Both the position numbers and the translations under genes were made by a program. The notes below the pieces were generated by a model, which searched no databases, was not told where the DNA came from, and saw nothing but the letters and a program-made list of their open reading frames with translations. A stretch of DNA of 64,000 nt from the IMG/VR virus record IMGVR_UViG_3300005965_000002, positions 124,001 through 188,000 of that record; one strand, 5' to 3'. Below are positions 22,003 to 52,601 of the stretch, one piece after another. Each line of letters starts with the position of its first letter. Positions within the stretch are counted from its first letter, which is position 1.

Positions 22003-26643
<4,641 letters not shown>

Positions 26644-36812: not shown

Positions 36813-39800
36813 ATGAATATTCCAATTGATGATAAAACACAATACGTAGTTAGTTCTACCGGCAGAGAGCACTCGCCAGATATAGTCGTAGCTAAGAGTG
36901 CTCTCTGGTGCGTTTTTTCTCGTTTTGGATCTCTTTATCTAAAGGAGTACAATGGTAGGGTTTTTAAGCGTATAAGATCAAAAAATAAGAACTTCTATCT
37001 TTCTCCAGCGTTAGATTCGCAGGCTAACTTAAATCCGGATAGGTTTTGGTTGTGGGAAGTAACAGGCGAGGGGTCGATAAATCTTATCGAGATAGAACCT
37101 TTTAGTGACAAGGATCCCATAGTACATAGAGAGATTAACATAGAAAATGAAAATATATTAAACATACGAGCTGAGGTACATCCTGGGGAATACACAAGAG
37201 TTTTTATGCTTACGGATACTCCCAGGAAGCTTCATTTGAAAATTTATGCGAATGTCCTCAATGCTGTATCTACATACGAACAGGTGTTTCCTTGGAATAC
37301 ATCAAGATTAGATTCTTTTTCAACAGGAAATAGCTTAGCCTACATAGAGGTTTCTTCACCACCAAATGTGTATGAGCAGGGATTTGCGCAGCCCTCCCCC
37401 TATATCGATTCTGTTTTTCAAGTAGTTCCGTACGCCGAAGTAACTGTAAAATGGAATACTGTTGATGACACTGATCAATATCAGCTTCAGAGATCAACTA
37501 GTCCTACATTTACGACAGGGGTGGAGACCGTCTATGAAGGAGTGGGTATAGAATATACGGATCTGACGCCTAGTTATAGTACATTTTATTATAGAGTAAG
37601 ATCAAGGTTATTAGGTGCAGACGTAGATAGCGATTGGTCTAATATTGAAGGAGTAACTTTACATAGCTCATCAGATTTTCCAAATGATCGACGTCCTGTT
37701 ATATACGTAGACCTGCAAAATGGTTCGGACGCAAATCTGGGCGATATACTACATCCTGTAAGAACCCTTTTTAGAGCCTATGAAATTACGTTTCCAGGAT
37801 CAATTATTATTCTCCAAAATGGCGGAACAAGTACAAGCGTCTCCTATGGAAACCTAACTATTGATAAAAACCTTACAATCCGGGGTGCCTATGGTTCTGA
37901 AGCTTATGTAGGAACTCTTACGGTTACTTCTGGTAATGTACTGTTTGAAAACTTAATTTTCAATAATACTGAGACCGGTATTGCTATAGACCATTCCGGT
38001 ATAGGTTCTGTTGCAGTAAAAGATTGTACATTTAATGAAGTCGATTATGGTATTCAAATAACAAATTCAAATTATGTAAGTGTACACAGAAATACTTTTA
38101 CAGGCCACAAGGTAGGCATAAAAGTTGAGGGCGGTACAGAGGTTAATATTAGTTCTAATGTTTTTGATTCAGGCTTTAGGTCAATTGATATAGAGAGCGT
38201 AGAAAGACTCGATCTGTGGAGAAATACGATCTACGGAGCTGGGAACATTTCTTTAGGAATATCACCTGACGAAAATTTGCGTATTGTGTATGTTACCCTG
38301 AGCAGTTTTAATATTAGTACAAAAAGAATACAACTTCCAGGTTTTGCCTCAGAATCTTCATCTACGCCAGGTAATTATGATGTTGTTGTGAATACCGTCA
38401 ACGGTCCTGCTTTCGATTACGGTACAGACTATACAGTTACAGGAAGCGGTTCTATAGTATCATGGGACGGGTTATCCATAGAGAATACGCTACAGGTAGG
38501 AGATATTCTCCGGGTCATGTATTCAGAGGGTACTGATCCTGGGGGAGGGGATGCTATTCGCCTTTTTAACATAGGTGATGACAGAAGCCGAGTAGACTCT
38601 AATAGCATTACTGGAGTAGGATCGGACATTCTATTTGGGGTGTTTTTTAACACACCAATAAGAATCAGGCATAACAACTTCTTCGGCGTAACTGGTTCTC
38701 AGCCTTACTCATCTATTGTGGCTCCCACGGAACCAGCAACGTATCCTGGAACAAATTTTTCAGATGATCCATTATACGTTGATCCGGGTAACCTAACGGA
38801 TCCGGATTTTAGATTACAGTCTACCTCACCAAACATAGATTCTGGAGACTATATTAGGTGGGGTCAAATACTGGAAGAAATGGGCATAGAAAAAATAAAC
38901 GGTAGCTACACTGGAATCAGTCCTATATTAAGACATAATGTAGCTGCTTTTAACAGAGATATAGACAGAGACGGAGCGCATCGTTTATATGGGGATGCCA
39001 CCGGGGATGTCGGAGCTTACGAATATCTAAGAGGTACATTTACTGGTGATGACTATTATGTAGATGAAAGAGGTTACGATTTAGTTAATACAGGAACTGA
39101 GAGTAGCCCCCTGGCTACGTTAGACCGGGGAGCTGTTTTAGCCGGTACAGGTGGAGCTGTTATCGTACACTCAAATAAGGTAATACCGTATTCTTCAGAA
39201 GGATACAACTATGGTAGGTATAGAAGTAAAAATATAAGGTTTAGTAGTACGGGTAGTGCATTTACGGTAGGTAGCGGAAGAACCCGTGATATGGCTTACG
39301 TGTACCCGTCTTTCCCGACGTACGCCACCGGTGAGGTGTATGTATCCAATGATGGTAACGATTCCAATCCTGGCACACATGACCAACCATTTAGAACTAT
39401 TAATAGGGCTCTTCAAGAAAGTCAAAATTATGTTATTGTGAAACCTGGAATATATAATAGCTTTGAGTCCGTGGCGGGTAAGCATTTAATCGGGGTTTCT
39501 CAGACTGACTCTGTTCTTCTATACGGAAAGAATTATAATACACTAAAATCCGGTTATTGGAGTCAAGATACTGTTTTGCCAGGTAGCGCCTCTTTTAGTA
39601 GTGGTGATGTGCTGACATTAACACCAGAGGTATGCCTGCTTTCCGATTTCTCTATGGAATCTAAAATAGATTTTAAAGCTACAGCGAATATAAACACAGA
39701 TGAATTTATCATAAGACTTGTTAATGATCCCGATTCTGAAGCAAAATTGGATGTACTGACTACAACTAAAAAATTTATAGAGGTAAAAAAATCTGGGACC

Positions 39801-40208
39801 ACTAATCCAAGGATATACCTGAGATATGGTAATGGGACAAACAGTTACTCCTCATCCTATTCCTTCACTGATACAGGTGAAGATGTAAAAATTAGAATCA
39901 TACTTGATGTTTTTTCTGGAATAAAATTTAGAGTAAAGGGAATTAAGAAGTTAGATGACAACCCAGAGAATGGCAGCGCTAATATAGAGAATGTAGATAT
40001 CAGTAAAGACATAAACATAAATAAGACTTTTGAAGACACAGAAGATTGGTGGGAATCCGCAGAAGGGTGGAGGGTCGCTTTTTATTCATCAGGAGGCGGC
40101 ACAACGGAGATAAAAAATATGAAAATAACCGCTAGTGATATCACCGATGTAGAAGCATACTCCTATTCAAAAATTAAAAGAAAAGTATTTGCTATCTTAG
40201 GGGCATAA
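36813..40208 (+). CDS. FN3 + right-handed beta-helix (pectate-lyase-like) tailspike/depolymerase-like protein
   Basis: FN3 (VTVKW...YQLQRS...YYRVRS); three YV(D/S)..G.D.N.G...P..T motifs; parallel beta-helix coils; DPDFRLQSTSPNIDSG...DVGAYEY. Confidence 0.75.
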   Translation: MNIPIDDKTQYVVSSTGREHSPDIVVAKSALWCVFSRFGSLYLKEYNGRVFKRIRSKNKNFYLSPALDSQANLNPDRFWLWEVTGEGSINLIEIEPFSDKDPIVHREINIENENILNIRAEVHPGEYTRVFMLTDTPRKLHLKIYANVLNAVSTYEQVFPWNTSRLDSFSTGNSLAYIEVSSPPNVYEQGFAQPSPYIDSVFQVVPYAEVTVKWNTVDDTDQYQLQRSTSPTFTTGVETVYEGVGIEYTDLTPSYSTFYYRVRSRLLGADVDSDWSNIEGVTLHSSSDFPNDRRPVIYVDLQNGSDANLGDILHPVRTLFRAYEITFPGSIIILQNGGTSTSVSYGNLTIDKNLTIRGAYGSEAYVGTLTVTSGNVLFENLIFNNTETGIAIDHSGIGSVAVKDCTFNEVDYGIQITNSNYVSVHRNTFTGHKVGIKVEGGTEVNISSNVFDSGFRSIDIESVERLDLWRNTIYGAGNISLGISPDENLRIVYVTLSSFNISTKRIQLPGFASESSSTPGNYDVVVNTVNGPAFDYGTDYTVTGSGSIVSWDGLSIENTLQVGDILRVMYSEGTDPGGGDAIRLFNIGDDRSRVDSNSITGVGSDILFGVFFNTPIRIRHNNFFGVTGSQPYSSIVAPTEPATYPGTNFSDDPLYVDPGNLTDPDFRLQSTSPNIDSGDYIRWGQILEEMGIEKINGSYTGISPILRHNVAAFNRDIDRDGAHRLYGDATGDVGAYEYLRGTFTGDDYYVDERGYDLVNTGTESSPLATLDRGAVLAGTGGAVIVHSNKVIPYSSEGYNYGRYRSKNIRFSSTGSAFTVGSGRTRDMAYVYPSFPTYATGEVYVSNDGNDSNPGTHDQPFRTINRALQESQNYVIVKPGIYNSFESVAGKHLIGVSQTDSVLLYGKNYNTLKSGYWSQDTVLPGSASFSSGDVLTLTPEVCLLSDFSMESKIDFKATANINTDEFIIRLVNDPDSEAKLDVLTTTKKFIEVKKSGTTNPRIYLRYGNGTNSYSSSYSFTDTGEDVKIRIILDVFSGIKFRVKGIKKLDDNPENGSANIENVDISKDININKTFEDTEDWWESAEGWRVAFYSSGGGTTEIKNMKITASDITDVEAYSYSKIKRKVFAILGA

Positions 40209-40211
40209 TCT

Positions 40212-41606
40212 ATGGATAGAGATGAAGTAAGAAGACCACATCAATTTAGGGATAACTTTGGTAGGCCGGAATTCAGGTTACCATACCGTGACGGTAATGA
40301 TACTCCGTATTCTTTGCCTTTAAGCCCTAAAAATGTAAATGTAACCAGCCCCTACTTAATAGGAGTAATAGACATTAGATGGGATTCTCCTGCTAGCTAT
40401 GCAGCCCATAATAGCTGGGAAGTGCAGGGCGTGAACATTTATAAGTCTTATGACACCCCCGAAGGTCCTTATAAAAAAATTAATGATACGCCTGTAGGTG
40501 CTCTATACTACCGCGATCAGACCAAAGAAGTTTATGTGGTAGATGAAGACCCTCTTGCTGGTGGTAGGTTTATCGCTGGGACTAATGCAACAAATGATTG
40601 GATAATAAAAACATTTCACAAGCCTTTAGTTATTCCTGGTACTAATGGTGAGATAGCTACTACCAGGGACCACGTAACCGTGAAAGTCAAAGAAACAGCA
40701 ATAGACGATTTCATAGAAGTCCCCCCATTTAAGGTATTCGGGGAAACTGGTGAGATATATTTAATAAACAGAAAGATCTATAATCACACGACTAACACTT
40801 TAGATGACCCGATACTTCCTAATATCACTGCCGGTGGTGAGGTGAGAGTAAGCTACACTCATATCGATAACCACATACAAACTAATATCAATAGGAAAAT
40901 TTACTATAAGGTGACTACAGTAGCTATTGATCCGGATGATGGGAATACTAAGGAGACACCTTTAAATGAATGTGAAGCTTATAATCTTTATGATATGGAA
41001 AAGATTGATTGGATATGGGCTGAGGCTATTCGAAGAAATAGATGGATGTTAGAGCAGGCGGGAGAAAGAGTAAACTTATTTATCCGTAAATGGGCGGGGC
41101 AAAGGTGCCATTGTTGGGATGAGCAATATAGAACATCAAAGTCTGATTGCTCAATATGCTACGGCACCGGGTATGTTGGGGGCTATGAAGGGCCGTACCC
41201 GATTATAGTAGCTCCTCCGGAAACCGAAAAAATGGTACAGCTCATGGATATGGGTTTACGGGTATCTTACGATTGGAATACATGGACCGGGCCTTACCCT
41301 CTTTTAAATGATAGGGATATAGTTGTACGTCAGAATAACGATAGATTTATGGTGAGTAGAGTGAATCCTCAGGGTTCAAGGGGAGCTATATATCAGCAGC
41401 ATTTTAGTCTAGAGCATCTTAATCAAAGTGATCCTGTATACCAAGTGGGTATACCAGGAGGAAGTGCTAATGTGCCTGCCGAATGGAATGCTTATAGAGA
41501 GGATCGTCCTACTGATGCTAGTCCAACTATACCTAATAAACCTGAGATACCTGATCAGTATGAATATAGAGGCCGGACTGTTTGTTTCGAGAATATAGTT
41601 TATTAA
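40212..41606 (+). CDS. FN3-containing head-closure/neck protein with Cys cluster
   Basis: PKNVNV...IRWDSP FN3; EAIRRNRWMLEQAGERV...RCHCWD...DCSICYGTGYVGGY; LLNDRDIVV...RFMVSRV. Confidence 0.65.
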   Translation: MDRDEVRRPHQFRDNFGRPEFRLPYRDGNDTPYSLPLSPKNVNVTSPYLIGVIDIRWDSPASYAAHNSWEVQGVNIYKSYDTPEGPYKKINDTPVGALYYRDQTKEVYVVDEDPLAGGRFIAGTNATNDWIIKTFHKPLVIPGTNGEIATTRDHVTVKVKETAIDDFIEVPPFKVFGETGEIYLINRKIYNHTTNTLDDPILPNITAGGEVRVSYTHIDNHIQTNINRKIYYKVTTVAIDPDDGNTKETPLNECEAYNLYDMEKIDWIWAEAIRRNRWMLEQAGERVNLFIRKWAGQRCHCWDEQYRTSKSDCSICYGTGYVGGYEGPYPIIVAPPETEKMVQLMDMGLRVSYDWNTWTGPYPLLNDRDIVVRQNNDRFMVSRVNPQGSRGAIYQQHFSLEHLNQSDPVYQVGIPGGSANVPAEWNAYREDRPTDASPTIPNKPEIPDQYEYRGRTVCFENIVY

Positions 41607-41619
41607 TTATCTCTTAATA
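41606..41619 (+). promoter_or_regulatory. Putative late promoter motif copy 8
   Basis: ATTATCTCTTAATA upstream of 41667. Confidence 0.6.
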
Positions 41620-41666
41620 AACAATTTTACAACAAGCATTAGTTTTTAATACTTTTGGAGGATAAC

Positions 41667-42425
41667 ATGGATCTTAAAGTTGCCGCTGAGAATCTGTTAA
41701 AAGTTGCAGATCAAATAGAAAGAGAAGCAGAGCAAAAGACTGTTTTTGCTTGCGAATCCTGTAATCATACTGCCACTCTGGCAGAAATAAATGCGGCTCG
41801 TAAGTCTTTCGCTGAGAAGGAAGCTTCAGAAACTGGTAAATCTGTGCGTGTAGCAAAAATCACTGTAAATGATAAGGTAGCCTGCGGTAACTGTGGTGAA
41901 GGCGCTATGTGCTATGAGTCTGATGAAGTGAGCTCTAAGTATTGGGTCGAAGCTGCAGATGAAGATGATTTAGAAACTCTTGATATAGCTGAAGAAGACG
42001 ATAAAGAAGTTTCGGAAAAAGAAGAGGATAAAGAGGAAGATAAAGAAGATTCTGATACTGAAGAAGATAAAGATACCGATGAAGATACGGACGAAGAGGA
42101 AAGTGAAGAGGAAGAAGAACTTCCCGATGACCTTTTTGAGCCTGTAGATGAACAGGATGATAAAAACGAGAAGGAAGAGGGAGAAGAAGAAGATAAAGAA
42201 GAAGAGTCTACTGAAGAAGATGATGAAGAGACAGACACAGAAGATATTGACGATGAAGAAGATGAAGAAGAGCCTAAGCCTAAGCCTAAGCCTAAGAAGA
42301 AAAAGAAAGACAGCCCTACAGATGGAAAAGCTAATGTGAATAAAGAGCCGCCGCCAAAGTTTGAAAAGATGCCTAAGGAAGCATCTGATCGTTTTTGGTC
42401 TTCGGTTTCAAGATATTCAATCTAA
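41667..42425 (+). CDS. Zinc-ribbon protein with long acidic tract
   Basis: CESCNH...CGNCG; about 100-aa D/E tract; KPKPKPK; ATG after ggagga. Confidence 0.7.
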   Translation: MDLKVAAENLLKVADQIEREAEQKTVFACESCNHTATLAEINAARKSFAEKEASETGKSVRVAKITVNDKVACGNCGEGAMCYESDEVSSKYWVEAADEDDLETLDIAEEDDKEVSEKEEDKEEDKEDSDTEEDKDTDEDTDEEESEEEEELPDDLFEPVDEQDDKNEKEEGEEEDKEEESTEEDDEETDTEDIDDEEDEEEPKPKPKPKKKKKDSPTDGKANVNKEPPPKFEKMPKEASDRFWSSVSRYSI

Positions 42426-42448
42426 GGAAAGGGATTTAATCCCTTTCC
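42426..42448 (+). terminator. Hairpin (possible terminator)
   Basis: ggaaagggat-tta-atccctttcc; no clear T tract. Confidence 0.5.
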
Positions 42449-42471
42449 TCACCAGTATATAAGATATAGAT

Positions 42472-43179
42472 ATGATTAAAGTAATCGGTAATTCTCCTCA
42501 GAAGATCACGATTCCTGACCTCCAGGAAGTCGTTTACTATAAACAAGTTAAAATATTTAGTGATGATGAGTACAAGGGATCTAAAGACCTGCAAAGGAAG
42601 ATCCAACAAGGCTTGTTAACTATAGTAGACGAATCTAAAGACCAGAGATCATCTTATATACCTCCAACATCTGTTAGAGTAGTTACTTCTGGTCAGGAAA
42701 GAACAGAGGTTGGAAAGCTAGTTGATTACATAAAGTCGTTAGAAGATAAGCTTGATCGTCTCCAGCAGGGATCCCCGGCTGTAGAAACTAAATCTGTTGA
42801 TAATGATAAGATAGATTTATTATTAGCGAAGATACATCAGCTAGAAGAGAAACTGAATAGTAAACCGCAAAATGATGCTGGTACTAATAATAGTGACAAT
42901 GAAGGGGTGATGCAGGCCATTTCTAAATTAGAGGAAAAGATTAACTCAAATGTAGAAGTTAATGCTCTAATACAGAAACTAGAAAAGTTAGTTACTTCCG
43001 GAGGTAGATCAGGAGCTGTAGAAAAATCTTCTGAGCCCACAAGACCTGAAGATATTTATATCCCCAATGTTACTGTGGAAGACGGAAGTTCTCATATAAA
43101 GCTTAAGGTAAGGTCTGTAGAAAAGAGCGATAATATCAATGATGCTCTTAAAGCCTTAAAAAAGATGAAATCTAAATAG
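42472..43179 (+). CDS. Coiled-coil hypothetical protein
   Basis: Repeated I/L-x-x-LE-x-K-L heptads. Confidence 0.65.
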   Translation: MIKVIGNSPQKITIPDLQEVVYYKQVKIFSDDEYKGSKDLQRKIQQGLLTIVDESKDQRSSYIPPTSVRVVTSGQERTEVGKLVDYIKSLEDKLDRLQQGSPAVETKSVDNDKIDLLLAKIHQLEEKLNSKPQNDAGTNNSDNEGVMQAISKLEEKINSNVEVNALIQKLEKLVTSGGRSGAVEKSSEPTRPEDIYIPNVTVEDGSSHIKLKVRSVEKSDNINDALKALKKMKSK

Positions 43180-43217
43180 GGTTAGAACAAGATAAAATTT
43201 TTTCTTAGGAGGAAATT

Positions 43218-45329
43218 ATGGCTAAAGGATTGGACGTCGGAACCTGCTTTTTGGTTTGTGCTGCTAATAACCCAAGGGACGAAAACGCAGATACAGAGAT
43301 TAACTCTATAAGAGATGCCTTTCTAGATATTGAGGCGGAAACCTCAACTATGAACATGCTGAAGATGTCTAATGTGTCCTTTGTGCAAGAAAATGATTTA
43401 GTGTATATAGTAGGTGACGCTGCTATGAATATGGCTAATCTCTTTAAAAGAGAAGCCAGGCGTCCGCTGAGTAAGGGTATAATTTCAGCAGGCGAGTTGG
43501 ATGCAGAGAAGATTCTCCTTATTCTTCTGAAGAATATTATAAAGGATCCTCAGGTAGACGAAGAAACAGTATACTACTCAGTCCCGGCAAAGCCTATTGA
43601 TAGAGATACGGACATAGTTTATCACGAGGCTATGTTTAAGAAATTGATTGAATCCCTGGGGTATAAAGCTATCGCTATGAATGAAGCAGCGGCCATTGTT
43701 TACGCTAACTGTGCTGCTGAGGGATTTACAGCTCTTGCTACAAGCTGCCTTACACCAGGTCAAAAAGTCATTACTAATAAAGGGTTTTGTAATATAGAAG
43801 ATATCAAAGATGGTTATGAGATTTTAACTAAAGAAGGTGCTTGGTGCAGGTGCACCCCGACGCAAAGGGCATATGAGGGAGACGTATATAAAATATCATC
43901 ATATGGTGGCAGCCCTTTTGAAGTTACATCAGACCATTTAGTTTGGGTTGGTCGTAATGGGGTATGGTCTTGGGTACCCGCAAAAGAAGTTGTTGTAGGT
44001 GATTTTATAAAGCAACCGTGGGATAACTTTAATTTAGAATTCTTGCCTAGTAGTAAACGTCCTTATATATGTTGTGAGGAAAGAATAACTAATTCTATCA
44101 GTAGCTCTCATAAAACGTACAATCTTACGGATGAAATGGCAGAGTTGATTGGATTTTGGTTAGGGGATGGTCACTTAGAGAGAGAACGTGGGGGTATATG
44201 CTTTACACAGAATGTTGCTGAACAAGAAAATATAGACAGAATTGCATACCTCGTTGATTCCGTTTTTGGTAAAGATATAGCTACATATGATCATGGTGAA
44301 AACTCCTGCAGAATCAAATTTTATACTAACTCTTTCCTAAATTGGTTAGATAAAAATTGCTATGATGAAGATGGTGTAAAGATTGTTCCCTGGAAGGTTT
44401 CCGAGCTAAACGATAGCATTTGTATGTCGATGCTTAGAGGTCTTATTGCTACGGACGGGGACATATCAAAGGACAAGAAACATATAGGATTTACTAATAC
44501 AAGTGCTAACTTAGCCCAATTTGTATATTTATCACTACAAAGATTAGGGTGTAATCCAACAGTTCATATAAGTTCTCCTAGAAAGGGCAAAGATGCAGTA
44601 CCCGATGGCCATAGCATTAACGGGACTAAGGATATTTATACAGTAAGGTCCTCTGGCTACCAATCCTTGTCATATATTTCATGGTTTAAAGCTCCTTATA
44701 AGACTATTAAAAAAAGTTACATAAGAGGAGAAACCGTCACAAAGATCAATAGTATCGATAAAAAGACCTACTCGGGAAAGGTTTATGATGTTTCTATAGA
44801 TGATGATAGTCACTCTTTTTGCCTCCCTGGAGCAGCTATTCATAATTGCGGTGCTGGTATGGTAAATACTTCTTTGGTTTATCAGACTATGGTAGGTATG
44901 TCTTTCTCGATTTCTCAATCCGGGGACTTTATAGACGAAAGCGCAGCTAAGGCAGTAGGAACAACAGCTACCCGCATTATGTCGGTAAAAGAACGCGGTG
45001 TAGACCTGCTCGATCCTTCTAAGGGAGATCCAAAGTACCTCAGGGAACGTGAGGCTATTGTAGTGTACTATCGTAACCTGATCCATAGAGTTATCGATGC
45101 TATTAAGAAAGAGTTCAAGAAGGATCAGAGCACGATAGAGCTTCCAGAAAGTGTACCGTGGATTATCAGTGGCGGCACCTCTAAAGCCATTAATTTCTTG
45201 GACTTCTTCCGCCAGGAATTTGATAAGGTAAAAGACACATTTCCCATTAACATTTCTGAAATTAGAATGGCTCAGGATCCTCTAAACGATGTAGCTAAAG
45301 GTCTTTTAATCGCCGCTATGAATGATTAA
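43218..45329 (+). CDS. Actin-like ATPase (MreB/ParM superfamily) interrupted by an intein
   Basis: Phosphate-1 GLDVGT; connect-1 MNEAAAI; phosphate-2 rebuilt as ATS|CGAGMVN; adenosine IISGGTS; connect-2 DPLNDVAKG. Confidence 0.85.
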   Translation: MAKGLDVGTCFLVCAANNPRDENADTEINSIRDAFLDIEAETSTMNMLKMSNVSFVQENDLVYIVGDAAMNMANLFKREARRPLSKGIISAGELDAEKILLILLKNIIKDPQVDEETVYYSVPAKPIDRDTDIVYHEAMFKKLIESLGYKAIAMNEAAAIVYANCAAEGFTALATSCLTPGQKVITNKGFCNIEDIKDGYEILTKEGAWCRCTPTQRAYEGDVYKISSYGGSPFEVTSDHLVWVGRNGVWSWVPAKEVVVGDFIKQPWDNFNLEFLPSSKRPYICCEERITNSISSSHKTYNLTDEMAELIGFWLGDGHLERERGGICFTQNVAEQENIDRIAYLVDSVFGKDIATYDHGENSCRIKFYTNSFLNWLDKNCYDEDGVKIVPWKVSELNDSICMSMLRGLIATDGDISKDKKHIGFTNTSANLAQFVYLSLQRLGCNPTVHISSPRKGKDAVPDGHSINGTKDIYTVRSSGYQSLSYISWFKAPYKTIKKSYIRGETVTKINSIDKKTYSGKVYDVSIDDDSHSFCLPGAAIHNCGAGMVNTSLVYQTMVGMSFSISQSGDFIDESAAKAVGTTATRIMSVKERGVDLLDPSKGDPKYLREREAIVVYYRNLIHRVIDAIKKEFKKDQSTIELPESVPWIISGGTSKAINFLDFFRQEFDKVKDTFPINISEIRMAQDPLNDVAKGLLIAAMND
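43746..44846 (+). mobile_element. Intein with LAGLIDADG homing endonuclease (367 aa)
   Basis: Starts CLTPGQKVIT; block B VTSDHLVWV; ELIGFWLGDGH and LRGLIATDG; VYDVSI...AAIHN followed by Cys. Confidence 0.92.
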
Positions 45330-45355
45330 AGTAATATCCCACCAGGTAGCACACT

Positions 45356-45388
45356 AAAGGGGGAGGAACTAGTTCCTCCCCCTTTTTT
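45356..45388 (+). terminator. Rho-independent terminator
   Basis: aaagggggaggaac-ta-gttcctcccccttt + T tract. Confidence 0.85.
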
Positions 45389-45396
45389 ATTGGCCA

Positions 45397-45410
45397 ATTA
45401 TCTATTAATA
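45397..45410 (+). promoter_or_regulatory. Putative late promoter motif copy 9
   Basis: ATTATCTATTAATA upstream of 45450. Confidence 0.6.
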
Positions 45411-45449
45411 AGAAATTGTTATTAGTACTTGTTTTTTAAAGAGATTTTT

Positions 45450-46862
45450 ATGGAAAGTAACCTTTTAAGAGCTATAAAATTTAGGGTTTTTGACGAGCTC
45501 CAGAACTCTGTCAATGCTCATGTGCAGTACCGTAATAAGGTCAAGGTATGGCATAAGTATCCTTATAAAGCGCGTGAGCACATGGGCGTATACATGAGGA
45601 ATGTATCCGCTACTAGGATTAAACTCTCTGCGGATGATTATGCTGGTGCTCTAAAAAGTCATTTGGCTATGGCTCGTGCTGAAAACCACGAGGGTAAATT
45701 TTTAGAGTGGGTATGGGAGGATTCTAATAATATTACCAAGTGGGAAGAAGAAGATGTAAGCAGCCAGGTAGACGGTAGTACTCGATTATTCACATTAAGT
45801 AAGGAAATGATAGCCGGGCAAGGTAATACTAGTATAGCAAATAACATAGGACAAGTTACAGTAACTATTAATGGAACAAAAATTTTTCCAGAGTTTGTCG
45901 ATGGAAAAAGAAAAATAGTTATGGTTCCTGAATGCCCCGCAGCTACAGATGTTGTAAAAATAGGCTATTACTACAACAATCTGACTCCCGCCGGAAGATA
46001 TTACATTCGCATAGCTACTCCTACGCTTTTTGATATTAGCCCACTTTATCAGGTGACCGGTGAGGTAGTTATTCAGCAGACTACAGGTACCGAGACCTCA
46101 GTTACTTTAGATAAGTCTAACCTTTTGCCCGGTAACGAGATTCTTTACACAAAAAAGGGTAAAAATTCTCATAAAATATACCTGGACAGAAGTACAGACT
46201 ATACCATAGATAATACTACAGGAGAGATTACATTTTTAGAACCTTTAAAGGCGAATACTACCCTTTACGCAAACTATAGGTGGATTGGTGATCTATTAGG
46301 TCCTTTTGATATACCTGATGAACGATACCATTATGTGAATGATGCTCTCCCTGGTGTTACTTTGGCTTTTGGTAATGAGATTATAGTAGGGGATCAATTA
46401 GTAGTTATTGTTTATAAAAGTAGAGAAGTTGCCGCAAAGGTATACAGTGGACACTGGGGCATGAACTTTGATATAGAAGTATTTGGTAGAGATCCGATAC
46501 AGTTACCAGAGCTGACAGACCAGATAGTAGATCATATGTGGAGTAAAAGAGAGAAATTAGTTGGTGAGGGTTTGACTTTAGAAGAGCTAGAGCCCACAGG
46601 CGAGGTAGAGGAAGTATACATAGAAGGTACTAACGATCAATATTATAAAAACACTATCACAATGACAATGATGACAGAGTGGAAGAGAATTAATGCTTAT
46701 AAGTATCAGCTTCTTGACTACAATACTCAAGTTTCTACTTCCCTGCAGACTTTTGACTATGTAGTTAATAATCAAGGTGTAATGATGCAGCTTCATTTGG
46801 AGCCTGTATACAAATCTGTGGAGGTTATCTACCCGAAAGTAGGATATCCCAGATATTTATAA
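45450..46862 (+). CDS. Tail completion/terminator-like protein with inserted Ig-like modules
   Basis: Position before sheath; GMNFDIEVFGRDPIQLPELTDQIVDHM pattern; EDVSSQVDG module shared with sheath; ATG 45450 preferred. Confidence 0.6.
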   Translation: MESNLLRAIKFRVFDELQNSVNAHVQYRNKVKVWHKYPYKAREHMGVYMRNVSATRIKLSADDYAGALKSHLAMARAENHEGKFLEWVWEDSNNITKWEEEDVSSQVDGSTRLFTLSKEMIAGQGNTSIANNIGQVTVTINGTKIFPEFVDGKRKIVMVPECPAATDVVKIGYYYNNLTPAGRYYIRIATPTLFDISPLYQVTGEVVIQQTTGTETSVTLDKSNLLPGNEILYTKKGKNSHKIYLDRSTDYTIDNTTGEITFLEPLKANTTLYANYRWIGDLLGPFDIPDERYHYVNDALPGVTLAFGNEIIVGDQLVVIVYKSREVAAKVYSGHWGMNFDIEVFGRDPIQLPELTDQIVDHMWSKREKLVGEGLTLEELEPTGEVEEVYIEGTNDQYYKNTITMTMMTEWKRINAYKYQLLDYNTQVSTSLQTFDYVVNNQGVMMQLHLEPVYKSVEVIYPKVGYPRYL

Positions 46863-46874
46863 GGATAATGTAGA

Positions 46875-46888
46875 ATTATCTATTAATA
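46875..46888 (+). promoter_or_regulatory. Putative late promoter motif copy 10
   Basis: ATTATCTATTAATA upstream of 46939. Confidence 0.6.
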
Positions 46889-46938
46889 TGTATAAGTTTA
46901 ATGGACCTAATATAAAGATTTAGATATGGAGATGAGAT

Positions 46939-47397
46939 ATGCCGATGTACGAGTACAAGTGCGGTCATTGTGGTTTTGAGTTCGAGGATATCACTTCCTT
47001 CGAGAAGAAGGATGATACCCGTAAATGTCCAGACTGTGAATCTATTGATGTCGTCCGGAAGCAGATATCCAGTTTTTCCTTTAAAACATCAATAGACCCG
47101 AGAAAGGGAGACACGGTAGCGACAAACAAGGAAATCGATAAAGTTGTAGGAGAGGCTTCCGCTATAAGGTGGGAAAATCTCGAAAAGAGAAGAAAAGAGA
47201 GATGGAAAAAAGGAAAACCGTTAGAGATAGCGGTTCCCAAGGATAATAAAGGACAACCCCGACCGATGGAAGTGGTGGGTACTGAGAAGCAGAGGCAGTT
47301 TAGAAAAGAATTCTCAGAAGCTTTAAGAGAGCATAGAAAAGAGAGATCCAAAAAGGGTCTGAAGCAGTTTGATGGTCCTGGAGCTATTACCGACTAA
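46939..47397 (+). CDS. FmdB-family zinc-ribbon protein (second paralog)
   Basis: MPMYEYKCGHCG...KCPDCES...VRKQISS. Confidence 0.8.
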   Translation: MPMYEYKCGHCGFEFEDITSFEKKDDTRKCPDCESIDVVRKQISSFSFKTSIDPRKGDTVATNKEIDKVVGEASAIRWENLEKRRKERWKKGKPLEIAVPKDNKGQPRPMEVVGTEKQRQFRKEFSEALREHRKERSKKGLKQFDGPGAITD

Positions 47398-47403
47398 TTG
47401 GTA

Positions 47404-47417
47404 ATAATCAATTAATA
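47404..47417 (+). promoter_or_regulatory. Putative late promoter motif copy 11
   Basis: ATAATCAATTAATA upstream of the sheath gene. Confidence 0.55.
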
Positions 47418-47521
47418 TTAACATCAAATATAATAGAATATCCCATATGAGATTCAGTTGTCCTAAATATTAAGGATATTAGATTGAAATCAATTAGTTC
47501 TGAATAAAAAGGAGAAATAGC

Positions 47522-50485
47522 ATGGCTATAGGACCGTTAGAATCTTTTGCCTTTCCTGGGGTATTTACTAGAACGATAAATGAGTCCACTGCTACCACCG
47601 CTGCAGGAGATATAAGGTTCCCTGCTATTATCGGTGTCGGGGCAGAAGAGCTAAGAGTCAGCGATTTTGAGATGATCAGAGGAAGCTCTTCTGTTGCTGA
47701 TAATCTTATTATCGATGAAGATGTAAGCTCCCAGCTTGATGGTACCAACAAAACTTTCACTGTTGAAAATTTTCCTATTGTTACCGGAGATGGAAATGGC
47801 ACAGTAGCAACATTACCTAATAATGTTATTGTTCTTGTTGATGACGAGCCTGTTCCCGTAGCAAAAGTTGAAGGATTGATTGGTCAGGTTACCCTGGTTA
47901 ATATTCCCGGGACGAACAGCACAGTAAGAGTAAATTATTACTACAAGCGTAGAGATACCTACATTGAAAATGAAGATATCTCCGACCAGGCTGACGGAAC
48001 AAACAAACAGTTTAAAGTAAAAAGTCGCAGAATTGTTACTGGGGACAACGGCGGCACCTCAGCCACAGACACTGAAATTAATCAGACAGTTGAAATTCTT
48101 TATGATCCTACCACTTCGGTAGGTGACGAATTCTTGAGAACTGTTCCGATTATCCAGGTTACTGTCGATGGTAACATTGCTACGATTACCGACCTGGACG
48201 GTGCTGATGGAATGTTCACTCTTCAAACGGCTCCCGCCTCTGATTCAGTTGTTCTTGTTAATTACTTCACGAACGATTGGCAGAATACTTTTGATATCCT
48301 TCCAGCAGCGCAGGTAAACAGGCTGGTTAAAGTCGGTCTTAGTCAGGATACCTCTGATTATTCAATTGGGAATGACTGCGTCTTGGCCGGAAGCAACAGA
48401 ATCCATTGGGGTCATTCTGTACAGACTCAAACTGGTATTTTTACATCTGGAGCTACACCTCTTGTTGATAGTGTTGTTGCTTCTCTTAGAGATGATAAAG
48501 TTTACGGTAGACTGGCTGAGCCTGATAAAGTGGCTACGGATTCGAGCGGAAACACAATTACTGACTCTTTAGGTAGAGCCTTGAATGATACTAACAATAA
48601 AGTGTTTGTTCTTCCTACTAATCCGGTTGATGGTACTGGCGTAGGAAAGTCTACTGAGAATATGAATGATGGTCCCGATTCGGGATCCTCAGATGATATT
48701 ATAGCTTATGTCGGATCAGACTGGGACGATGCTTTAAGTAACGGCCCTGTTACCATCACTAAAGTTGATGGTAATAAAATCTGGTTATCAACCGCTCCTT
48801 CACAGGCTCTTGAAGAAAAGGTTTTCGTTACTTATTACGAAAATAATTTGATAGACGAAACTTGGACAATTACTAATAAAGTTTCTGGTGGAATCGGTGT
48901 TGGAAAATATACGATTACTTCTAGAGTCAGTGGAAACGGAATCGCAGTTACACGCACGGGAGACGGGTCGATTGCTCCTGTTTATGCAGGGTCGGGCGCT
49001 GTAGACGTACAGGTTAATCCTCTTAAGGGCAGTGTAGAAAGAGTAACTATTACTTTTGACGGCACTGGCGGTTTCACAGTTACTTCTAAGCTGGGACCAA
49101 CTTTTACGACTGACGGTCGCACGGGTTCAGTAACAGCTAATGATGCTAATAAAGGATACCTGGGACAGACTTATATTGATCCTACCACAGGGTTCAGAGT
49201 TACTTTCTCTTCAGATACAGGATCCTTTGACCCGGGTGATGGTGATACCGTGGTCTATGATCTTGGTAATCCTGAAACTACTGATGCGGAAGAGAGATTC
49301 TATATCGATGTCGACACCGATTTTATAAGAGCCATTCCGGGCATCAACCTTACGGTAAGCAATACTTCCGGAGGTGGTGTTGATAACGTTGATAACACCG
49401 CCTTGGTAAGAACATATAACAGAAGCGGAAACGAGCCCTCAGTGGGAGATACCTACTACGTTTCTTTTGACAGGCAGAAGACCAGCTATCTTAAGAGATT
49501 TTTCACATCAATGAGTGACGTTATAAGAGAATACGGACCCATTGATCCTAATAATCCTATTGTTGTAGCTGCTAACCTTATGTTCTTGAATGGAGCCAGG
49601 GCGATTGTTATTAAACAGATCCAAAAGGCTGCTGGTCAGACAGACGCAACTGTTCAATCTTATATTGAAGGAATCGATGAATTTGACGAACCTCTGTCTA
49701 ACGGTTTGCGGCCTTCTTTGATCCAACCTCTGACCACTAACAGTGAAGTTCAGAATTATCTGAAACTTTCTAACGCTACTCAGAGTAGTCTCCGTTACAG
49801 AAATGAGCGTACTAGTATTATCGGTTTTGCTACCGGAACTACTCCTGACCAGGTAATACAGAGAGTGAAGGCTATCAAGAGCGAAAAGATAACAGCCGTT
49901 TATCCTGACTCAGGAATCATCGCAATTGAAGATGCCTTTGGAAATGAAGTCGAGTATATTTTCGACGGTTCTTTTATAGCGGCAGCTTTAGCTGGACGAG
50001 ATGTTTCTCCGGTTAATGATATAGCTACTACACTTACTAATAAAAACATTGTAGGATTCAGAAGACTTAACAGGAACCTTGATAATGTGACAGCTTCCTT
50101 GGTTGCTAACGCAGGTTGTACAATGTTAGAGGATAGAAATAACTCAATCCGAGTTATGTTTTATCTAACAACTGATCTAAGTACTCCTCTTACACGTAAC
50201 CCCAGAATAGTAGAAGTAAAACACTTTATTCAGAAGGGACTGCGTGACGTCCTTGATAGATATATAGGGGTAAAGAATCTTCCTAGAGTTATACCTCAGG
50301 TATCTGCTACAGTAGACTCCTATTTCAGGAGTCTAAAGCAAGCAAACATAATAGCAGATTTTCGCCCCAGCAAAGTAACTCAAAATAATACGGATCCGAG
50401 TACTTTAGATGTAGAGGGATTCTATAGCCCAGTATTTCCTGTCAACTGGATTATTGTCACACTTAACCTGAGAAGTTCAATATAA
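47522..50485 (+). CDS. Contractile tail sheath protein
   Basis: N-terminal FPGVFTR; C-terminal AAALAG...TNK.I.GF...AGCTMLE...FYSPVFPVNWIIVTL sheath signature. Confidence 0.9.
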   Translation: MAIGPLESFAFPGVFTRTINESTATTAAGDIRFPAIIGVGAEELRVSDFEMIRGSSSVADNLIIDEDVSSQLDGTNKTFTVENFPIVTGDGNGTVATLPNNVIVLVDDEPVPVAKVEGLIGQVTLVNIPGTNSTVRVNYYYKRRDTYIENEDISDQADGTNKQFKVKSRRIVTGDNGGTSATDTEINQTVEILYDPTTSVGDEFLRTVPIIQVTVDGNIATITDLDGADGMFTLQTAPASDSVVLVNYFTNDWQNTFDILPAAQVNRLVKVGLSQDTSDYSIGNDCVLAGSNRIHWGHSVQTQTGIFTSGATPLVDSVVASLRDDKVYGRLAEPDKVATDSSGNTITDSLGRALNDTNNKVFVLPTNPVDGTGVGKSTENMNDGPDSGSSDDIIAYVGSDWDDALSNGPVTITKVDGNKIWLSTAPSQALEEKVFVTYYENNLIDETWTITNKVSGGIGVGKYTITSRVSGNGIAVTRTGDGSIAPVYAGSGAVDVQVNPLKGSVERVTITFDGTGGFTVTSKLGPTFTTDGRTGSVTANDANKGYLGQTYIDPTTGFRVTFSSDTGSFDPGDGDTVVYDLGNPETTDAEERFYIDVDTDFIRAIPGINLTVSNTSGGGVDNVDNTALVRTYNRSGNEPSVGDTYYVSFDRQKTSYLKRFFTSMSDVIREYGPIDPNNPIVVAANLMFLNGARAIVIKQIQKAAGQTDATVQSYIEGIDEFDEPLSNGLRPSLIQPLTTNSEVQNYLKLSNATQSSLRYRNERTSIIGFATGTTPDQVIQRVKAIKSEKITAVYPDSGIIAIEDAFGNEVEYIFDGSFIAAALAGRDVSPVNDIATTLTNKNIVGFRRLNRNLDNVTASLVANAGCTMLEDRNNSIRVMFYLTTDLSTPLTRNPRIVEVKHFIQKGLRDVLDRYIGVKNLPRVIPQVSATVDSYFRSLKQANIIADFRPSKVTQNNTDPSTLDVEGFYSPVFPVNWIIVTLNLRSSI

Positions 50486-51866: not shown

Positions 51867-52601
51867 ATGGCAAGGGATAGAGACACATATGTACATCGTC
51901 ACGGCGTTACACCCGAAACGATGTCTGTTATTAGTACCAAGAATAAGCTTTATGCTGTTCCTGCAGATAGCGGGGCTACCGAAGCTTTTCAAATTGGTGT
52001 AATTGCTACTTTTGATCCGAGCGAGACACGCGGTATCGAAACTGTGCGCGGTATAGGTTTTGGCGATCATGTAGCCGAATTAGTTCCCGGTTTAACGGAG
52101 CCAATGACTATTACTGTTACTCGTACAGCACAGTATCTTTCCATGATCTTTCAGGTTTTTGGTTATAAGGGTGGTATTGATGGTCTGGTCAGGTCTTTAC
52201 GCCACCACAAGTGGCCCTTTGATGTGCGCCAGGAGCAAGTGATTAGTAGCATAGAGCAAGTTACTAGTTCAACTTCAAATCGATCTGGTAGCAGATACGG
52301 AGGTATTGTTCCATCTTCCGACGAATTTGATGAGGATTCTCTCAATGGTGAGCCTCTAGATGCTATAGTCACCTTATATGAGGGCTGTTGGATGTCTGAT
52401 TATAGTGTAAGCTATTCTTCAGATACAGCTTTGGTTCAAGAGAACGTAACTCTTAATGTGACGGATGTTGTTTCTAGTAATGTTGATTACACTGAGAGTT
52501 CCGATTTCTTTAATACGGAAGCTATTTCCAGTATCATGAGAAATCCCGGACCGGGGGTAGACCCGCTTGGTGAGGGTGGAGTTGCCGTAGGTAGGCAATA
52601 G
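51867..52601 (+). CDS. Tail tube protein
   Basis: IGVIATFDPSETR...VRGIG...ELVPG...LYEGCWMSDYSVSY...VQENVTLNVTD myophage tube pattern. Confidence 0.85.
   Translation: MARDRDTYVHRHGVTPETMSVISTKNKLYAVPADSGATEAFQIGVIATFDPSETRGIETVRGIGFGDHVAELVPGLTEPMTITVTRTAQYLSMIFQVFGYKGGIDGLVRSLRHHKWPFDVRQEQVISSIEQVTSSTSNRSGSRYGGIVPSSDEFDEDSLNGEPLDAIVTLYEGCWMSDYSVSYSSDTALVQENVTLNVTDVVSSNVDYTESSDFFNTEAISSIMRNPGPGVDPLGEGGVAVGRQ

What the first reader, a model, noticed from the sequence alone, without database searches (positions are those of the whole stretch)
43218..45329. Phage actin-like ATPase embedded among neck and tail genes, with an intein in the phosphate-2 loop
Seen: all five actin-fold motifs in a 336-aa extein; a 367-aa LAGLIDADG intein sits exactly in phosphate-2, where the +1 Cys is part of S-C-G-A-G. 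The gene follows a coiled-coil gene, and the pair ends in a strong terminator. Known: tubulin (PhuZ) spindles occur in jumbo phages; phage actins are much less characterised. Inference: a two-gene cytomotive or assembly system, with the coiled-coil as adaptor, for positioning capsids or DNA, dependent on splicing.
Basis: partly seen in the sequence, partly recalled or inferred. Interest (0 to 1): 0.66.

Follow-up and report, generated by a model that had tools for sequence, protein, structure and literature searches.

The report
Huge-phage actin homologue split by intein
A very large bacteriophage carries, inside its tail-gene block, an actin-like (volactin-family) gene interrupted by a self-splicing intein in its ATP-binding loop; the gene, a small partner gene and their position are conserved across a clade of huge phages, which points to an uncharacterised phage cytoskeletal system.

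Summary
ORF 43218-45329 encodes 703 aa: a 176-aa N-extein, a 367-aa class-1 LAGLIDADG intein (43746-44846) and a 160-aa C-extein.

- **Family:** the exteins match Pfam Volactin (195 bits, cut-off 35), not MreB (10 bits).
- **Insertion site:** the intein sits between the residue aligned to the phosphate-2 Asp of MreB and the G-x-G loop. In this family that residue is an invariant Ser, also in haloarchaeal members.
- **Recurrence:** at least 27 other alleles carry inteins, at three to four sites in and just after this loop.
- **Context:** the window is a fragment of a phage estimated at about 0.47 Mb. The order sheath-like protein, acidic protein, 235-aa partner, actin, sheath-like protein, Zn-ribbon protein, sheath is kept in three subclades, down to 43% identity.
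- **Partner:** a virus-only orphan with a folded N-domain, three heptad-like helices and a conserved C-terminus. Complex prediction gives only weak support (0.57; best control 0.01).

Filament formation and the biological role are inferred, not shown.

The parts
41609..41619 (+). Promoter-like motif ATCTCTTAATA ahead of the acidic gene. It may start the transcription unit that includes the partner and actin genes.
   Evidence: ATCTWTTAATA (up to 1 mismatch) occurs 23 times in the window against 9.7 +/- 2.8 in shuffles. Most + strand copies lie 30-115 nt before gene starts.
41655..42425 (+). Gene for a 256-aa protein: an N-terminal CxxC...CxxC region, an extremely acidic middle, and a KPKPKPKKKKK tail. 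It is a conserved upstream neighbour.
   Evidence: Translation. Homologues sit in the same position in L003-L007, L016 and L017. No Pfam or PHROG family.
42425..42449 (+). Perfect 12-nt-arm hairpin just before the partner gene, with no T-run after it.
   Evidence: dG -15. Strong hairpins occupy the same place in L003, L004, L005, L007 and L016.
42472..43179 (+). Partner gene, 235 aa: a folded N-domain (aa 1-55), three heptad-like helices, and a conserved C-terminal segment ending in a basic amphipathic helix.
   Evidence: Alignments A2, A3 and A5. AF2 model: pLDDT 92 for aa 1-55, 67.8 overall. Virus-only orphan cluster. No fold match.
43207..43212 (+). Shine-Dalgarno AGGAGG, 5 nt before the ATG of the actin gene.
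   Evidence: Read directly from the sequence.
43218..45329 (+). Precursor ORF, 703 aa: volactin-family actin homologue with an intein.
   Evidence: PF25216 195 bits; LAGLIDADG_3 3.6e-14.
43218..43745 (+). N-extein, aa 1-176: phosphate-1, connect-1 and the first strand of phosphate-2.
   Evidence: It is 59-71% identical to L003-L007.
43746..44846 (+). Class-1 intein with a LAGLIDADG homing endonuclease, 367 aa. Motifs: C1, TSDH (block B), LIGFWLGDGH, LRGLIATDGD, block F, terminal HN.
   Evidence: Related inteins at the same site occur in 19 other alleles, 44-68% identical. GC is 0.371 against 0.417 and 0.429 for the exteins.
44847..45329 (+). C-extein, aa 544-703, plus the stop codon: +1 Cys, G-A-G-M-V-N loop, GDFID, adenosine motif GGTS, connect-2.
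   Evidence: It is 63-85% identical to L003-L007.
45356..45385 (+). Intrinsic terminator: perfect 15-nt arms followed by TTTTATT.
   Evidence: dG about -30. Equivalent hairpins lie after the gene in L004, L006 and L007.
45400..45410 (+). Exact copy of the promoter-like motif ATCTATTAATA. It starts the next unit (the 477-aa sheath-like gene).

Best explanation
The gene encodes a phage member of the volactin family of actin homologues. Translation gives an inactive 703-aa precursor, because a selfish class-1 LAGLIDADG intein splits the phosphate-2 hairpin of the nucleotide-binding cleft. Protein splicing joins Ser176 to Cys544 and yields a 336-aa actin-fold protein plus a free homing endonuclease.

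The spliced protein most likely binds ATP and assembles into filaments, as its cellular relative volactin does. It is probably made together with the upstream 235-aa partner, and perhaps the acidic 256-aa protein, from a unit that ends at the terminator at 45356.

The unit keeps its place between sheath-like genes across a clade of huge phages. I therefore infer a late-infection cytoskeletal role in virion morphogenesis or in positioning large virion parts or DNA, with the partner as the likely link between filament and cargo.

Shown: the gene, the intein anatomy, family membership, the fold of a close homologue, the synteny and the recurrent inteins. Inferred: splicing, ATP binding, polymerisation, partner binding and the biological role.
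For: - **Family:** PF25216 at 195 bits against a 35-bit cut-off; MreB_Mbl only 10 bits.
- **Motifs:** the same S-x-G-x-G-M-x-N, GGDWID, GGTS and PLxxVAxG motifs occur in haloarchaeal family members that are 35-37% identical.
- **Experimental precedent:** volactin forms dynamic filaments in vivo (PMC10869688).
- **Selection on the gene:** 723 word-search relatives, the best 120 at 63% identity or more, on contigs up to 470 kb. The phage clade has 98/95 support. Inteins have entered this gene at three to four sites in and just after the phosphate-2 hairpin, a pattern seen in conserved, indispensable genes.
- **Synteny and operon signals:**
- **Partner binding:** Complex prediction score 0.57, 0.57, 0.50 against a best control of 0.01.
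Against: - No experiment exists on any phage member.
- Phosphate-2 lacks the Asp that MreB, ParM and actin use, so ATP hydrolysis could be slow or absent. I could not read HVO_2015 itself to confirm that it shares the Ser.
- The complex result is rated weak by the tool. The mark was reached by 58 of 80 solved complexes and 2 of 110 mismatched pairs, but at 0.60 or under by only 7 of those 80 and by both mismatches that passed. Partner pLDDT is at least 54 and runs agree in at least 33% of contacts. The actin chain was P0006, not the window's own product, and my own alignments were used.
- Placement in a tail module is only circumstantial for function. A deeper viral branch (P0154) sits among NAD, RtcB and RNA-repair genes instead.
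- The hairpin before the partner gene may terminate or process transcripts.
Confidence: 0.5

Rival explanations
1. A ParMRC/AlpAC-type DNA positioning system. The actin filament, through a DNA-binding adaptor, moves or anchors phage genomes for replication, packaging or a carrier state, rather than acting on virion parts.
For: Precedent: prophage CGP3 AlpC with its adaptor AlpA (PMC4446434, PMC5539076). Relatives carry DNA-binding domains fused to the actin: ParB-HTH (E 3.5e-4) in the planctomycete paralogue L021:3232-5193, and HTH_23 (E 4e-4) in the phage protein P0147. The partner's layout (N-domain, linker, C-terminal amphipathic helix) recalls ParR.
Against: No iterons or centromere-like repeats lie around the unit. 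The partner has no recognisable HTH or RHH domain and no family at all. Both HTH hits are below Pfam's cut-offs. The gene sits in a tail block, not a replication block.
Confidence: 0.2
2. A non-polymerising ASKHA ATPase that acts as an assembly chaperone for sheath, tail or neck proteins, analogous to the Hsp70 homologue of closteroviruses.
For: It sits between three sheath-domain paralogues (464 aa, 477 aa and the sheath). In the viral structure library the nearest matches are viral Hsp70 homologues. The loss of the phosphate-2 Asp could mean altered chemistry.
Against: There is no substrate-binding domain and no Hsp70 Pfam hit. Against solved structures, all 50 best matches are filament formers and no Hsp70 appears among them. 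The viral library has few actin-like entries, so its Hsp70 hits (TM 0.5-0.6 by the query, rmsd 7-10) reflect what it holds. The same Ser variant occurs in cellular volactin-family proteins.
Confidence: 0.12
3. A virion-borne protein. It is packaged, perhaps with the acidic 256-aa protein, and delivered into the host to set up infection, or it forms a structural polymer of the particle.
For: Only the location in the structural block and the adjacency to a highly acidic protein that recalls internal virion proteins.
Against: I know of no precedent. All nucleotide-binding motifs are conserved, which argues for an enzyme-like cytoplasmic role. There is no PHROG structural family hit.
Confidence: 0.05
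4. The window's copy is functionally dead: the intein no longer splices, and the gene is tolerated debris.
For: None directly. Splicing was not tested.
Against: All splicing residues and both LAGLIDADG motifs are intact. The 2,112-nt frame is open. The exteins remain 88.7% identical to an intein-less allele. Nineteen other alleles keep related inteins open at the same site.
Confidence: 0.03

Closest known systems
Volactin (HVO_2015 of Haloferax volcanii; Pfam PF25216)
   Same: Same Pfam family (195 bits). It is 35-37% identical to haloarchaeal family members and shares their phosphate-2 variant S-F-G-A-G-M-x-N, GGDWID, GGTS and connect-2 motifs. The size is similar, about 335 aa.
   Different: It is encoded by a huge phage, in a tail-gene block, and forms its own clade (98/95). 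It carries an intein. Its neighbour is a soluble orphan protein, whereas the haloarchaeal copies I read follow a membrane protein with no detectable similarity. Volactin's role is cell shape.
MamK, MreB and BeeR (bacterial actins with solved filaments)
   Different: Only 16-21% identical. It fails the MreB HMM (10 bits against 27). The phosphate-2 Asp is replaced by Ser and Thr-Thr by Met-Val. No membrane-targeting helix was looked for.
AlpC/AlpA of prophage CGP3 and ParM/ParR of plasmid R1
   Same: A mobile-element-encoded actin homologue next to a small partner gene; the partner ends in a C-terminal helix. For ParR that feature is from my own knowledge and was not tested here.
   Different: A different actin family. 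The partner is unrelated and lies upstream. No centromere repeats lie nearby. The locus is in a structural module of a lytic-type huge phage.
PhuZ tubulin spindle of nucleus-forming jumbo phages
   Same: A phage-encoded cytoskeletal polymer in very large phages (reviewed in PMC7950403).
   Different: A tubulin fold, not an actin fold. No tubulin was found in the 258-kb fragment, but it is only about 55% of the genome. No function is known here.
Class-1 inteins with LAGLIDADG endonucleases in phage and archaeal genes (for example PI-PkoII, 2cw7)
   Same: Cys1, TxxH, two LAGLIDADG motifs, terminal HN and +1 Cys. Weak sequence match to PI-PkoII (8.7e-6). The insertion lies in a nucleotide-binding motif of a conserved gene.
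   Different: The host protein is an actin homologue. In the library searched I found no natural intein reported in an actin-fold cytoskeletal protein; in the listed papers that use both words, 'intein' occurs only once or twice, presumably as a purification tag (I did not open them).

Membership tests
Volactin family (Pfam PF25216) | Score above the curated gathering cut-off over the whole profile | tested here: met
   195.2 bits against a cut-off of 35. Two stretches cover profile positions 1-169 and 174-321, on either side of the intein.
Volactin family (Pfam PF25216) | Family-specific motifs shared with cellular members (S-x-G-x-G-M-x-N, GGDWID, GGTS, PLxxVAxG) | tested here: met
   Alignment A4 with the Haloarcula pNG700, Halogeometricum pHBOR01 and Planctomycetota proteins.
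Volactin family (Pfam PF25216) | Dynamic filaments in vivo | not testable with these tools
   Shown only for HVO_2015 (PMC10869688).
Polymerising actin superfamily (actin, MreB, ParM, MamK, FtsA) | Five conserved motifs: phosphate-1, connect-1, phosphate-2, adenosine, connect-2 | tested here: met
   Motif positions. Their register on MreB and FtsA comes from hhalign.
Polymerising actin superfamily (actin, MreB, ParM, MamK, FtsA) | Canonical phosphate-2 Asp (D-x-G-x-G-T) | tested here: not met
   An invariant Ser occupies that column in 122 phage sequences and in haloarchaeal and planctomycete members. MreB has VVD-IGGGT there.
Polymerising actin superfamily (actin, MreB, ParM, MamK, FtsA) | Four-subdomain actin fold closest to filament formers rather than to Hsp70 or sugar kinases | tested here: met
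Polymerising actin superfamily (actin, MreB, ParM, MamK, FtsA) | Nucleotide-dependent polymerisation and ATPase activity | not testable with these tools
   Needs purified protein.
MreB/Mbl (Pfam PF06723) | Score above the gathering cut-off | tested here: not met
   10.3 bits against 27. MreB sits on a very long branch in the tree.
Type II (ParMRC/AlpAC-like) segregation locus | The adaptor protein binds the actin | tested here: inconclusive
   Complex prediction gives weak support: 0.57 against a best control of 0.01.
Type II (ParMRC/AlpAC-like) segregation locus | Centromere-like repeat array next to the genes | tested here: not met
   Window 41500-47600 holds only codon-level repeats inside the acidic gene and the two hairpins.
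Type II (ParMRC/AlpAC-like) segregation locus | The adaptor has a DNA-binding domain | tested here: inconclusive
   No Pfam or PHROG family and no fold match. The N-domain (aa 1-55) is confidently folded but unassigned.
Class-1 intein with LAGLIDADG homing endonuclease | Cys/Ser1, block B TxxH, block F, terminal HN, nucleophilic +1 residue | tested here: met
   C177, TSDH 237-240, VYDVSIDDDSHSF 522-534, HN 542-543, C544. Intein_splicing and Hint hits fall below cut-off, but LAGLIDADG_3 scores 53 bits against 22.5.
Class-1 intein with LAGLIDADG homing endonuclease | Two LAGLIDADG motifs with acidic residues | tested here: met
   LIGFWLGDGH (310-319) and LRGLIATDGD (406-415).
Class-1 intein with LAGLIDADG homing endonuclease | Intein-free alleles with an uninterrupted host motif exist | tested here: met
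   L003-L007 and P0002-P0121 read ...S-[FLWCAH]-G-A-G....
Class-1 intein with LAGLIDADG homing endonuclease | Protein splicing and homing activity | not testable with these tools
   Needs expression. Indirect support: the exteins of P0142 are 26-27% identical to the window's, while its intein is 44% identical.
Hsp70/DnaK | Hsp70 family match and a substrate-binding domain | tested here: not met
   No Hsp70 Pfam hit. The protein ends with the actin-fold domain. hhalign to DnaK aligns only phosphate-1.

The most novel reading that the evidence does not exclude
Huge phages of this clade build their own actin cytoskeleton, an actin counterpart of the PhuZ tubulin spindle. It is encoded inside the tail module and, with its orphan partner, moves, aligns or scaffolds very large virion parts (or the genome) late in infection. 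The intein in the ATP loop could also make filament formation conditional on splicing.
Probability: 0.25. Interest if true: 0.8.

Novelty: new variant of a known kind. Interest (0 to 1): 0.6.

Why it matters
Phage-made cytoskeletons are so far known in detail only for tubulin (PhuZ) in nucleus-forming jumbo phages, and for a ParM-like actin in one prophage. Here a different actin family turns out to have a large, well-conserved viral branch in phages of roughly 0.2-0.6 Mb. Its cellular members shape haloarchaeal cells, and the family passed the Pfam cut-off in 55 of 121 sampled Planctomycetota genomes.

The gene always sits between sheath-like genes and has a dedicated orphan partner. That gives a concrete, testable candidate for how very large phages organise late infection.

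The family-wide loss of the phosphate-2 Asp is a natural experiment on actin-fold catalysis. Repeated intein invasion at three to four sites in and just after one loop marks that loop as the most constrained part of the protein. It also supplies natural split and conditional versions of an actin homologue.

Two broad reviews of jumbo phages do not mention actin homologues at all.

Tried and rejected
- **Joined exteins.** The exteins were searched apart by reference, and natural intein-less homologues (P0006, L003-L007) served as proxies.
- **PHROGs** gave nothing for either extein.
- **Sequence search of solved structures** gave nothing for the actin, the 464-aa and 477-aa neighbours or the sheath.
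- **hhalign against single E. coli sequences** (MreB, FtsA, DnaK) gave low probabilities (2-6%). I used it only for motif register.
It was redone without that row.
- **No centromere-like repeats**.
- **No tubulin** in the 258-kb fragment. This is not evidence of absence at 55% completeness.
- **The big profile search** (search of protein representatives) was not used, because the family was already settled by Pfam and the word search.
- **P0155** (Volactin fragment plus BY-kinase domains on a 2.2-kb contig) was set aside as a possible chimeric or truncated record.
- **Host** was not determined.
Full report
**What the window is.** The window is bases 124,001-188,000 of a 258,580-bp linear IMG/VR virus record that CheckV rates about 55% complete. 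The full phage is therefore probably near 0.47 Mb. Related proteins lie on contigs of 464-470 kb and in the uncultured huge phages LR745208.1 (485 kb) and LR756511.1 (595 kb).

Around the finding, all on the + strand, lie:
- a collagen-like tail fibre (22003-26643);
- a beta-helix protein (36813-40208);
- a 464-aa virion structural protein (40212-41606);
- the tail sheath (47522-50485);
- a further virion structural protein (51867-52601).

The 464-aa and 477-aa proteins that flank the finding both show weak similarity to sheath proteins. 'Tail genes' is confirmed. I could not verify any neck gene.

**The observation.** ORF 43218-45329 is open for 703 codons. Residues 177-543 are an intein: Cys1 (CLTPG), block B TSDH, two LAGLIDADG motifs (LIGFWLGDGH, LRGLIATDGD), block F, terminal His-Asn and a +1 Cys. 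Pfam finds LAGLIDADG_3 at 3.6e-14, and there is a weak match to the solved intein PI-PkoII.

The flanks of 176 and 160 aa match Pfam Volactin at 195 bits over profile positions 1-169 and 174-321. Five IMG/VR contigs and more than 100 database proteins carry the same gene without the insert. They read ...S-S-F-G-A-G-M... straight through, which fixes the boundaries to the residue. They were searched apart, and the natural intein-less allele P0006 (88.7% identical to the exteins) stood in for the spliced product.

**Fold and family.** P0006, folded with 122 homologues, gives pLDDT 90.5 and pTM 0.87.
- Foldseek against solved structures puts MamK first (TM 0.71/0.73), then MreB, BeeR and actins.
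- Sequence alone finds no solved relative, and the MreB HMM scores 10 bits against a 27-bit cut-off.

So this is a distinct actin family, not an MreB.

Haloarchaeal megaplasmid proteins of the family (Haloarcula pNG700, Halogeometricum pHBOR01) are 35-37% identical to P0006 and share its motifs. The family also passes the cut-off in 55 of 121 sampled Planctomycetota genomes. There it sits next to ordinary cellular genes such as HflX.

In a maximum-likelihood tree the huge-phage sequences form a clade with 98/95 support, apart from the planctomycete and haloarchaeal rows. E. coli MreB sits on a very long branch. The founding member, H. volcanii volactin, forms dynamic filaments in vivo (PMC10869688).

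**Where the intein sits.** Profile alignment to E. coli MreB and FtsA puts ALASS-FGAGMVN on VVD-IGGGTTE and VVD-IGGGTMD. The probabilities are low, so I use these alignments only for register.

One amendment matters. In this family that Asp is an invariant Ser, Thr-Thr is Met-Val, and the following acidic residue is Asn. This is a family-wide trait, found in cellular members too, and not a defect of this copy. I could not read HVO_2015 itself to confirm it there.

**Recurrent inteins.** A word search with the whole precursor found at least 27 further intein-bearing alleles. By junction reading, in P0006 numbering, they fall at these sites:

| Site | Position | +1 residue | Intein type | Alleles |
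|---|---|---|---|---|
| A | S177 \| 178 | Cys | LAGLIDADG, 360-369 aa | the window plus 19 others |
| A' | after G179 | Ser | begins CLTPD, like the site-A inteins | P0141 |
| B | after N184 or S185 | Cys | HNH seen in P0149; P0152 carries the same precomputed annotation | P0149, P0152 |
| C | before G-D-W-I-D | Cys | longer inteins; weak LAGLIDADG_3 hit in P0143 | six alleles |

- Site-A inteins are 44-68% identical to the window's. In P0142 the exteins are only 26-27% identical but the intein is 44%, which fits horizontal homing.
- The nearest intein-free allele (88.7%) is closer to the window's exteins than any intein-bearing one (72-75%). Presence is therefore polymorphic among close relatives.
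- The position that becomes +1 is variable (F, L, W, C, A, H) and is natively Cys in some intein-free and planctomycete proteins.
- The phage itself is intein-rich.

Several independent inteins within about 25 residues argue that the gene is indispensable and that this loop is its most constrained part.

**Neighbours and transcription.** The order runs: beta-helix protein, 464-aa structural protein, acidic 256-aa protein, 235-aa protein, actin, 477-aa protein, Zn-ribbon protein, sheath. It is kept in L003-L007 and in two contigs binned into unrelated MAGs (L016, L017). The core is also kept in LR745208.1 at 43-49% identity, in L032 and in the contig of P0143. A deeper viral branch (P0154) lies among NAD, RtcB and RNA-repair genes instead.

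- The gap between partner and actin genes is 3-38 nt in five genomes, with AGGAGG before the ATG here.
- A perfect hairpin (42425-42449) precedes the partner gene, and a strong terminator (45356-45385) follows the actin gene. Equivalent hairpins occur in relatives.
- An enriched promoter-like motif, ATCTWTTAATA (23 copies against 9.7 +/- 2.8), stands before the acidic gene (41609), the 477-aa gene (45400), the Zn-ribbon gene (46878) and the sheath gene (47407). None stands before the partner gene.

The unit may therefore be three genes rather than two.

**The partner.**
- It has no Pfam or PHROG family.
- The word search found only 5 further homologues besides the window's own record.
- Its Atlas cluster is virus-only.
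- Its model shows a confident 55-aa alpha/beta N-domain (pLDDT 92), three amphipathic heptad-like helices separated by disordered linkers, and a conserved C-terminal stretch ending in a basic helix.

Complex prediction of P0006 with the window's partner gave scores of 0.57, 0.57 and 0.50 against a best control of 0.01. The tool rates this as weak support. The mark was reached by 58 of 80 solved complexes and 2 of 110 mismatched pairs, but at 0.60 or under by only 7 of those 80 and by both passing mismatches. Partner pLDDT was at least 54, and runs agreed in at least 33% of contacts. My own alignments were used, so the counts hold only roughly. With conserved adjacency as a prior, I put binding at about even odds.

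**Mechanism and rivals.** My best reading has three parts:
- a selfish intein must splice out to restore the nucleotide cleft;
- the 336-aa product then polymerises like its cellular relatives;
- it acts with its partner late in infection on virion parts or DNA.

I rank a ParMRC/AlpAC-like DNA system second. Two relatives carry weak HTH fusions, and the CGP3 AlpAC system is a precedent. Against it, there are no centromere repeats and no DNA-binding domain in the partner.

An Hsp70-like chaperone role is third. The tail context and the Hsp70 hits in the viral library favour it. No Hsp70 appears among the best solved matches, and there is no substrate-binding domain. A virion-borne role and a dead gene are unlikely.

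**Novelty.** Automated pipelines already label these proteins 'actin-like ATPase', and Pfam and Atlas clusters include viral members. The fold is therefore not news. In the library searched I found no description of this phage clade, its tail-module position, its partner, or natural inteins in an actin homologue. Two broad jumbo-phage reviews do not mention actin, MreB or ParM.

Noticed in passing
G000:C1 62405-62962 (-), 68751-69620 (+), 89426-91210 (-), 115911-116702 (+), 248581-248739 (+); all outside the window: The phage is intein-rich. At least five further long ORFs (1010-1299 aa) carry LAGLIDADG_3 and/or intein-splicing domains. I did not identify their host genes.
   Followed up: partly
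window 3961-6000 (+): A 679-aa ORF combines HNH-like and LAGLIDADG homing-endonuclease-like regions (aa 6-320) with a C-terminal DNA methyltransferase domain. The neighbour at 1062-3032 has a similar methyltransferase end.
   Followed up: no
window 28562-29068, inside ORF 27773-29305 (+): A weak intein-splicing/Hint-like match (19.7 bits, below cut-off) at the C-terminal part of a 510-aa protein of unknown function.
   Followed up: no
window 6348, 9675, 18423, 19931, 21951, 27721, 31809, 41609, 45400, 46878, 47407 (+): The motif ATCTWTTAATA is enriched (23 copies against 9.7 +/- 2.8 in shuffles, 0 of 100 shuffles reach it). It lies about 30-115 nt before many gene starts, so it is a candidate phage promoter element. 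Similar words follow the actin terminator in L004 and L006. A different TATATA[AG] word lies just before the partner gene here and in L003, L005, L006 and L016.
   Followed up: partly
window 41655-42425 (+): A 256-aa protein with an N-terminal CxxC...CxxC pair, about 130 residues of almost pure Asp/Glu, and a KPKPKPKKKKK tail. It is conserved upstream of the partner gene in relatives and may share its transcript.
   Followed up: partly
window 40212-41606 and 45429-46862 (+): Both proteins flanking the actin unit show weak similarity to tail-sheath proteins (29-35% over 77-110 aa). The sheath itself is unusually long (987 aa here, 1526-1665 aa in L032 and L008).
   Followed up: partly
L021:2206-3222 and L021:3232-5196 (Planctomycetales MAG), and the genome search: PF25216 passes its cut-off in 55 of 121 sampled Planctomycetota genomes, often with two or more matches per genome. 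In L021 the second of a tandem pair has a weak ParB-HTH N-terminus and a long low-complexity tail. I found nothing in the papers retrieved here about a planctomycete actin family.
   Followed up: partly
L025:2920-3828 and L026:2797-3696 (haloarchaeal megaplasmids): The volactin-family genes of Haloarcula pNG700 and Halogeometricum pHBOR01 each follow a conserved ~300-aa membrane protein with an acidic tail (36% identical to each other). It may be a cellular partner and is unrelated to the phage partner.
   Followed up: partly
L016 (WJJK01000382.1, 'Candidatus Altiarchaeales' MAG) and L017 (QNDG01000298.1, 'KSB1' MAG): These MAG contigs carry the same huge-phage synteny as the window (structural protein, acidic protein, partner, actin, sheath-like protein). 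They are almost certainly phage contigs mis-binned into cellular genomes.
   Followed up: partly
window 13633-17787 (+): A 1384-aa ORF with at least four glycosyltransferase-type regions in a row.
   Followed up: no
window 22003-26643 (+): A 1546-aa collagen-like tail-fibre gene. Its repeats create many long spurious ORFs on both strands, for example 24617-26335 (-).
   Followed up: no
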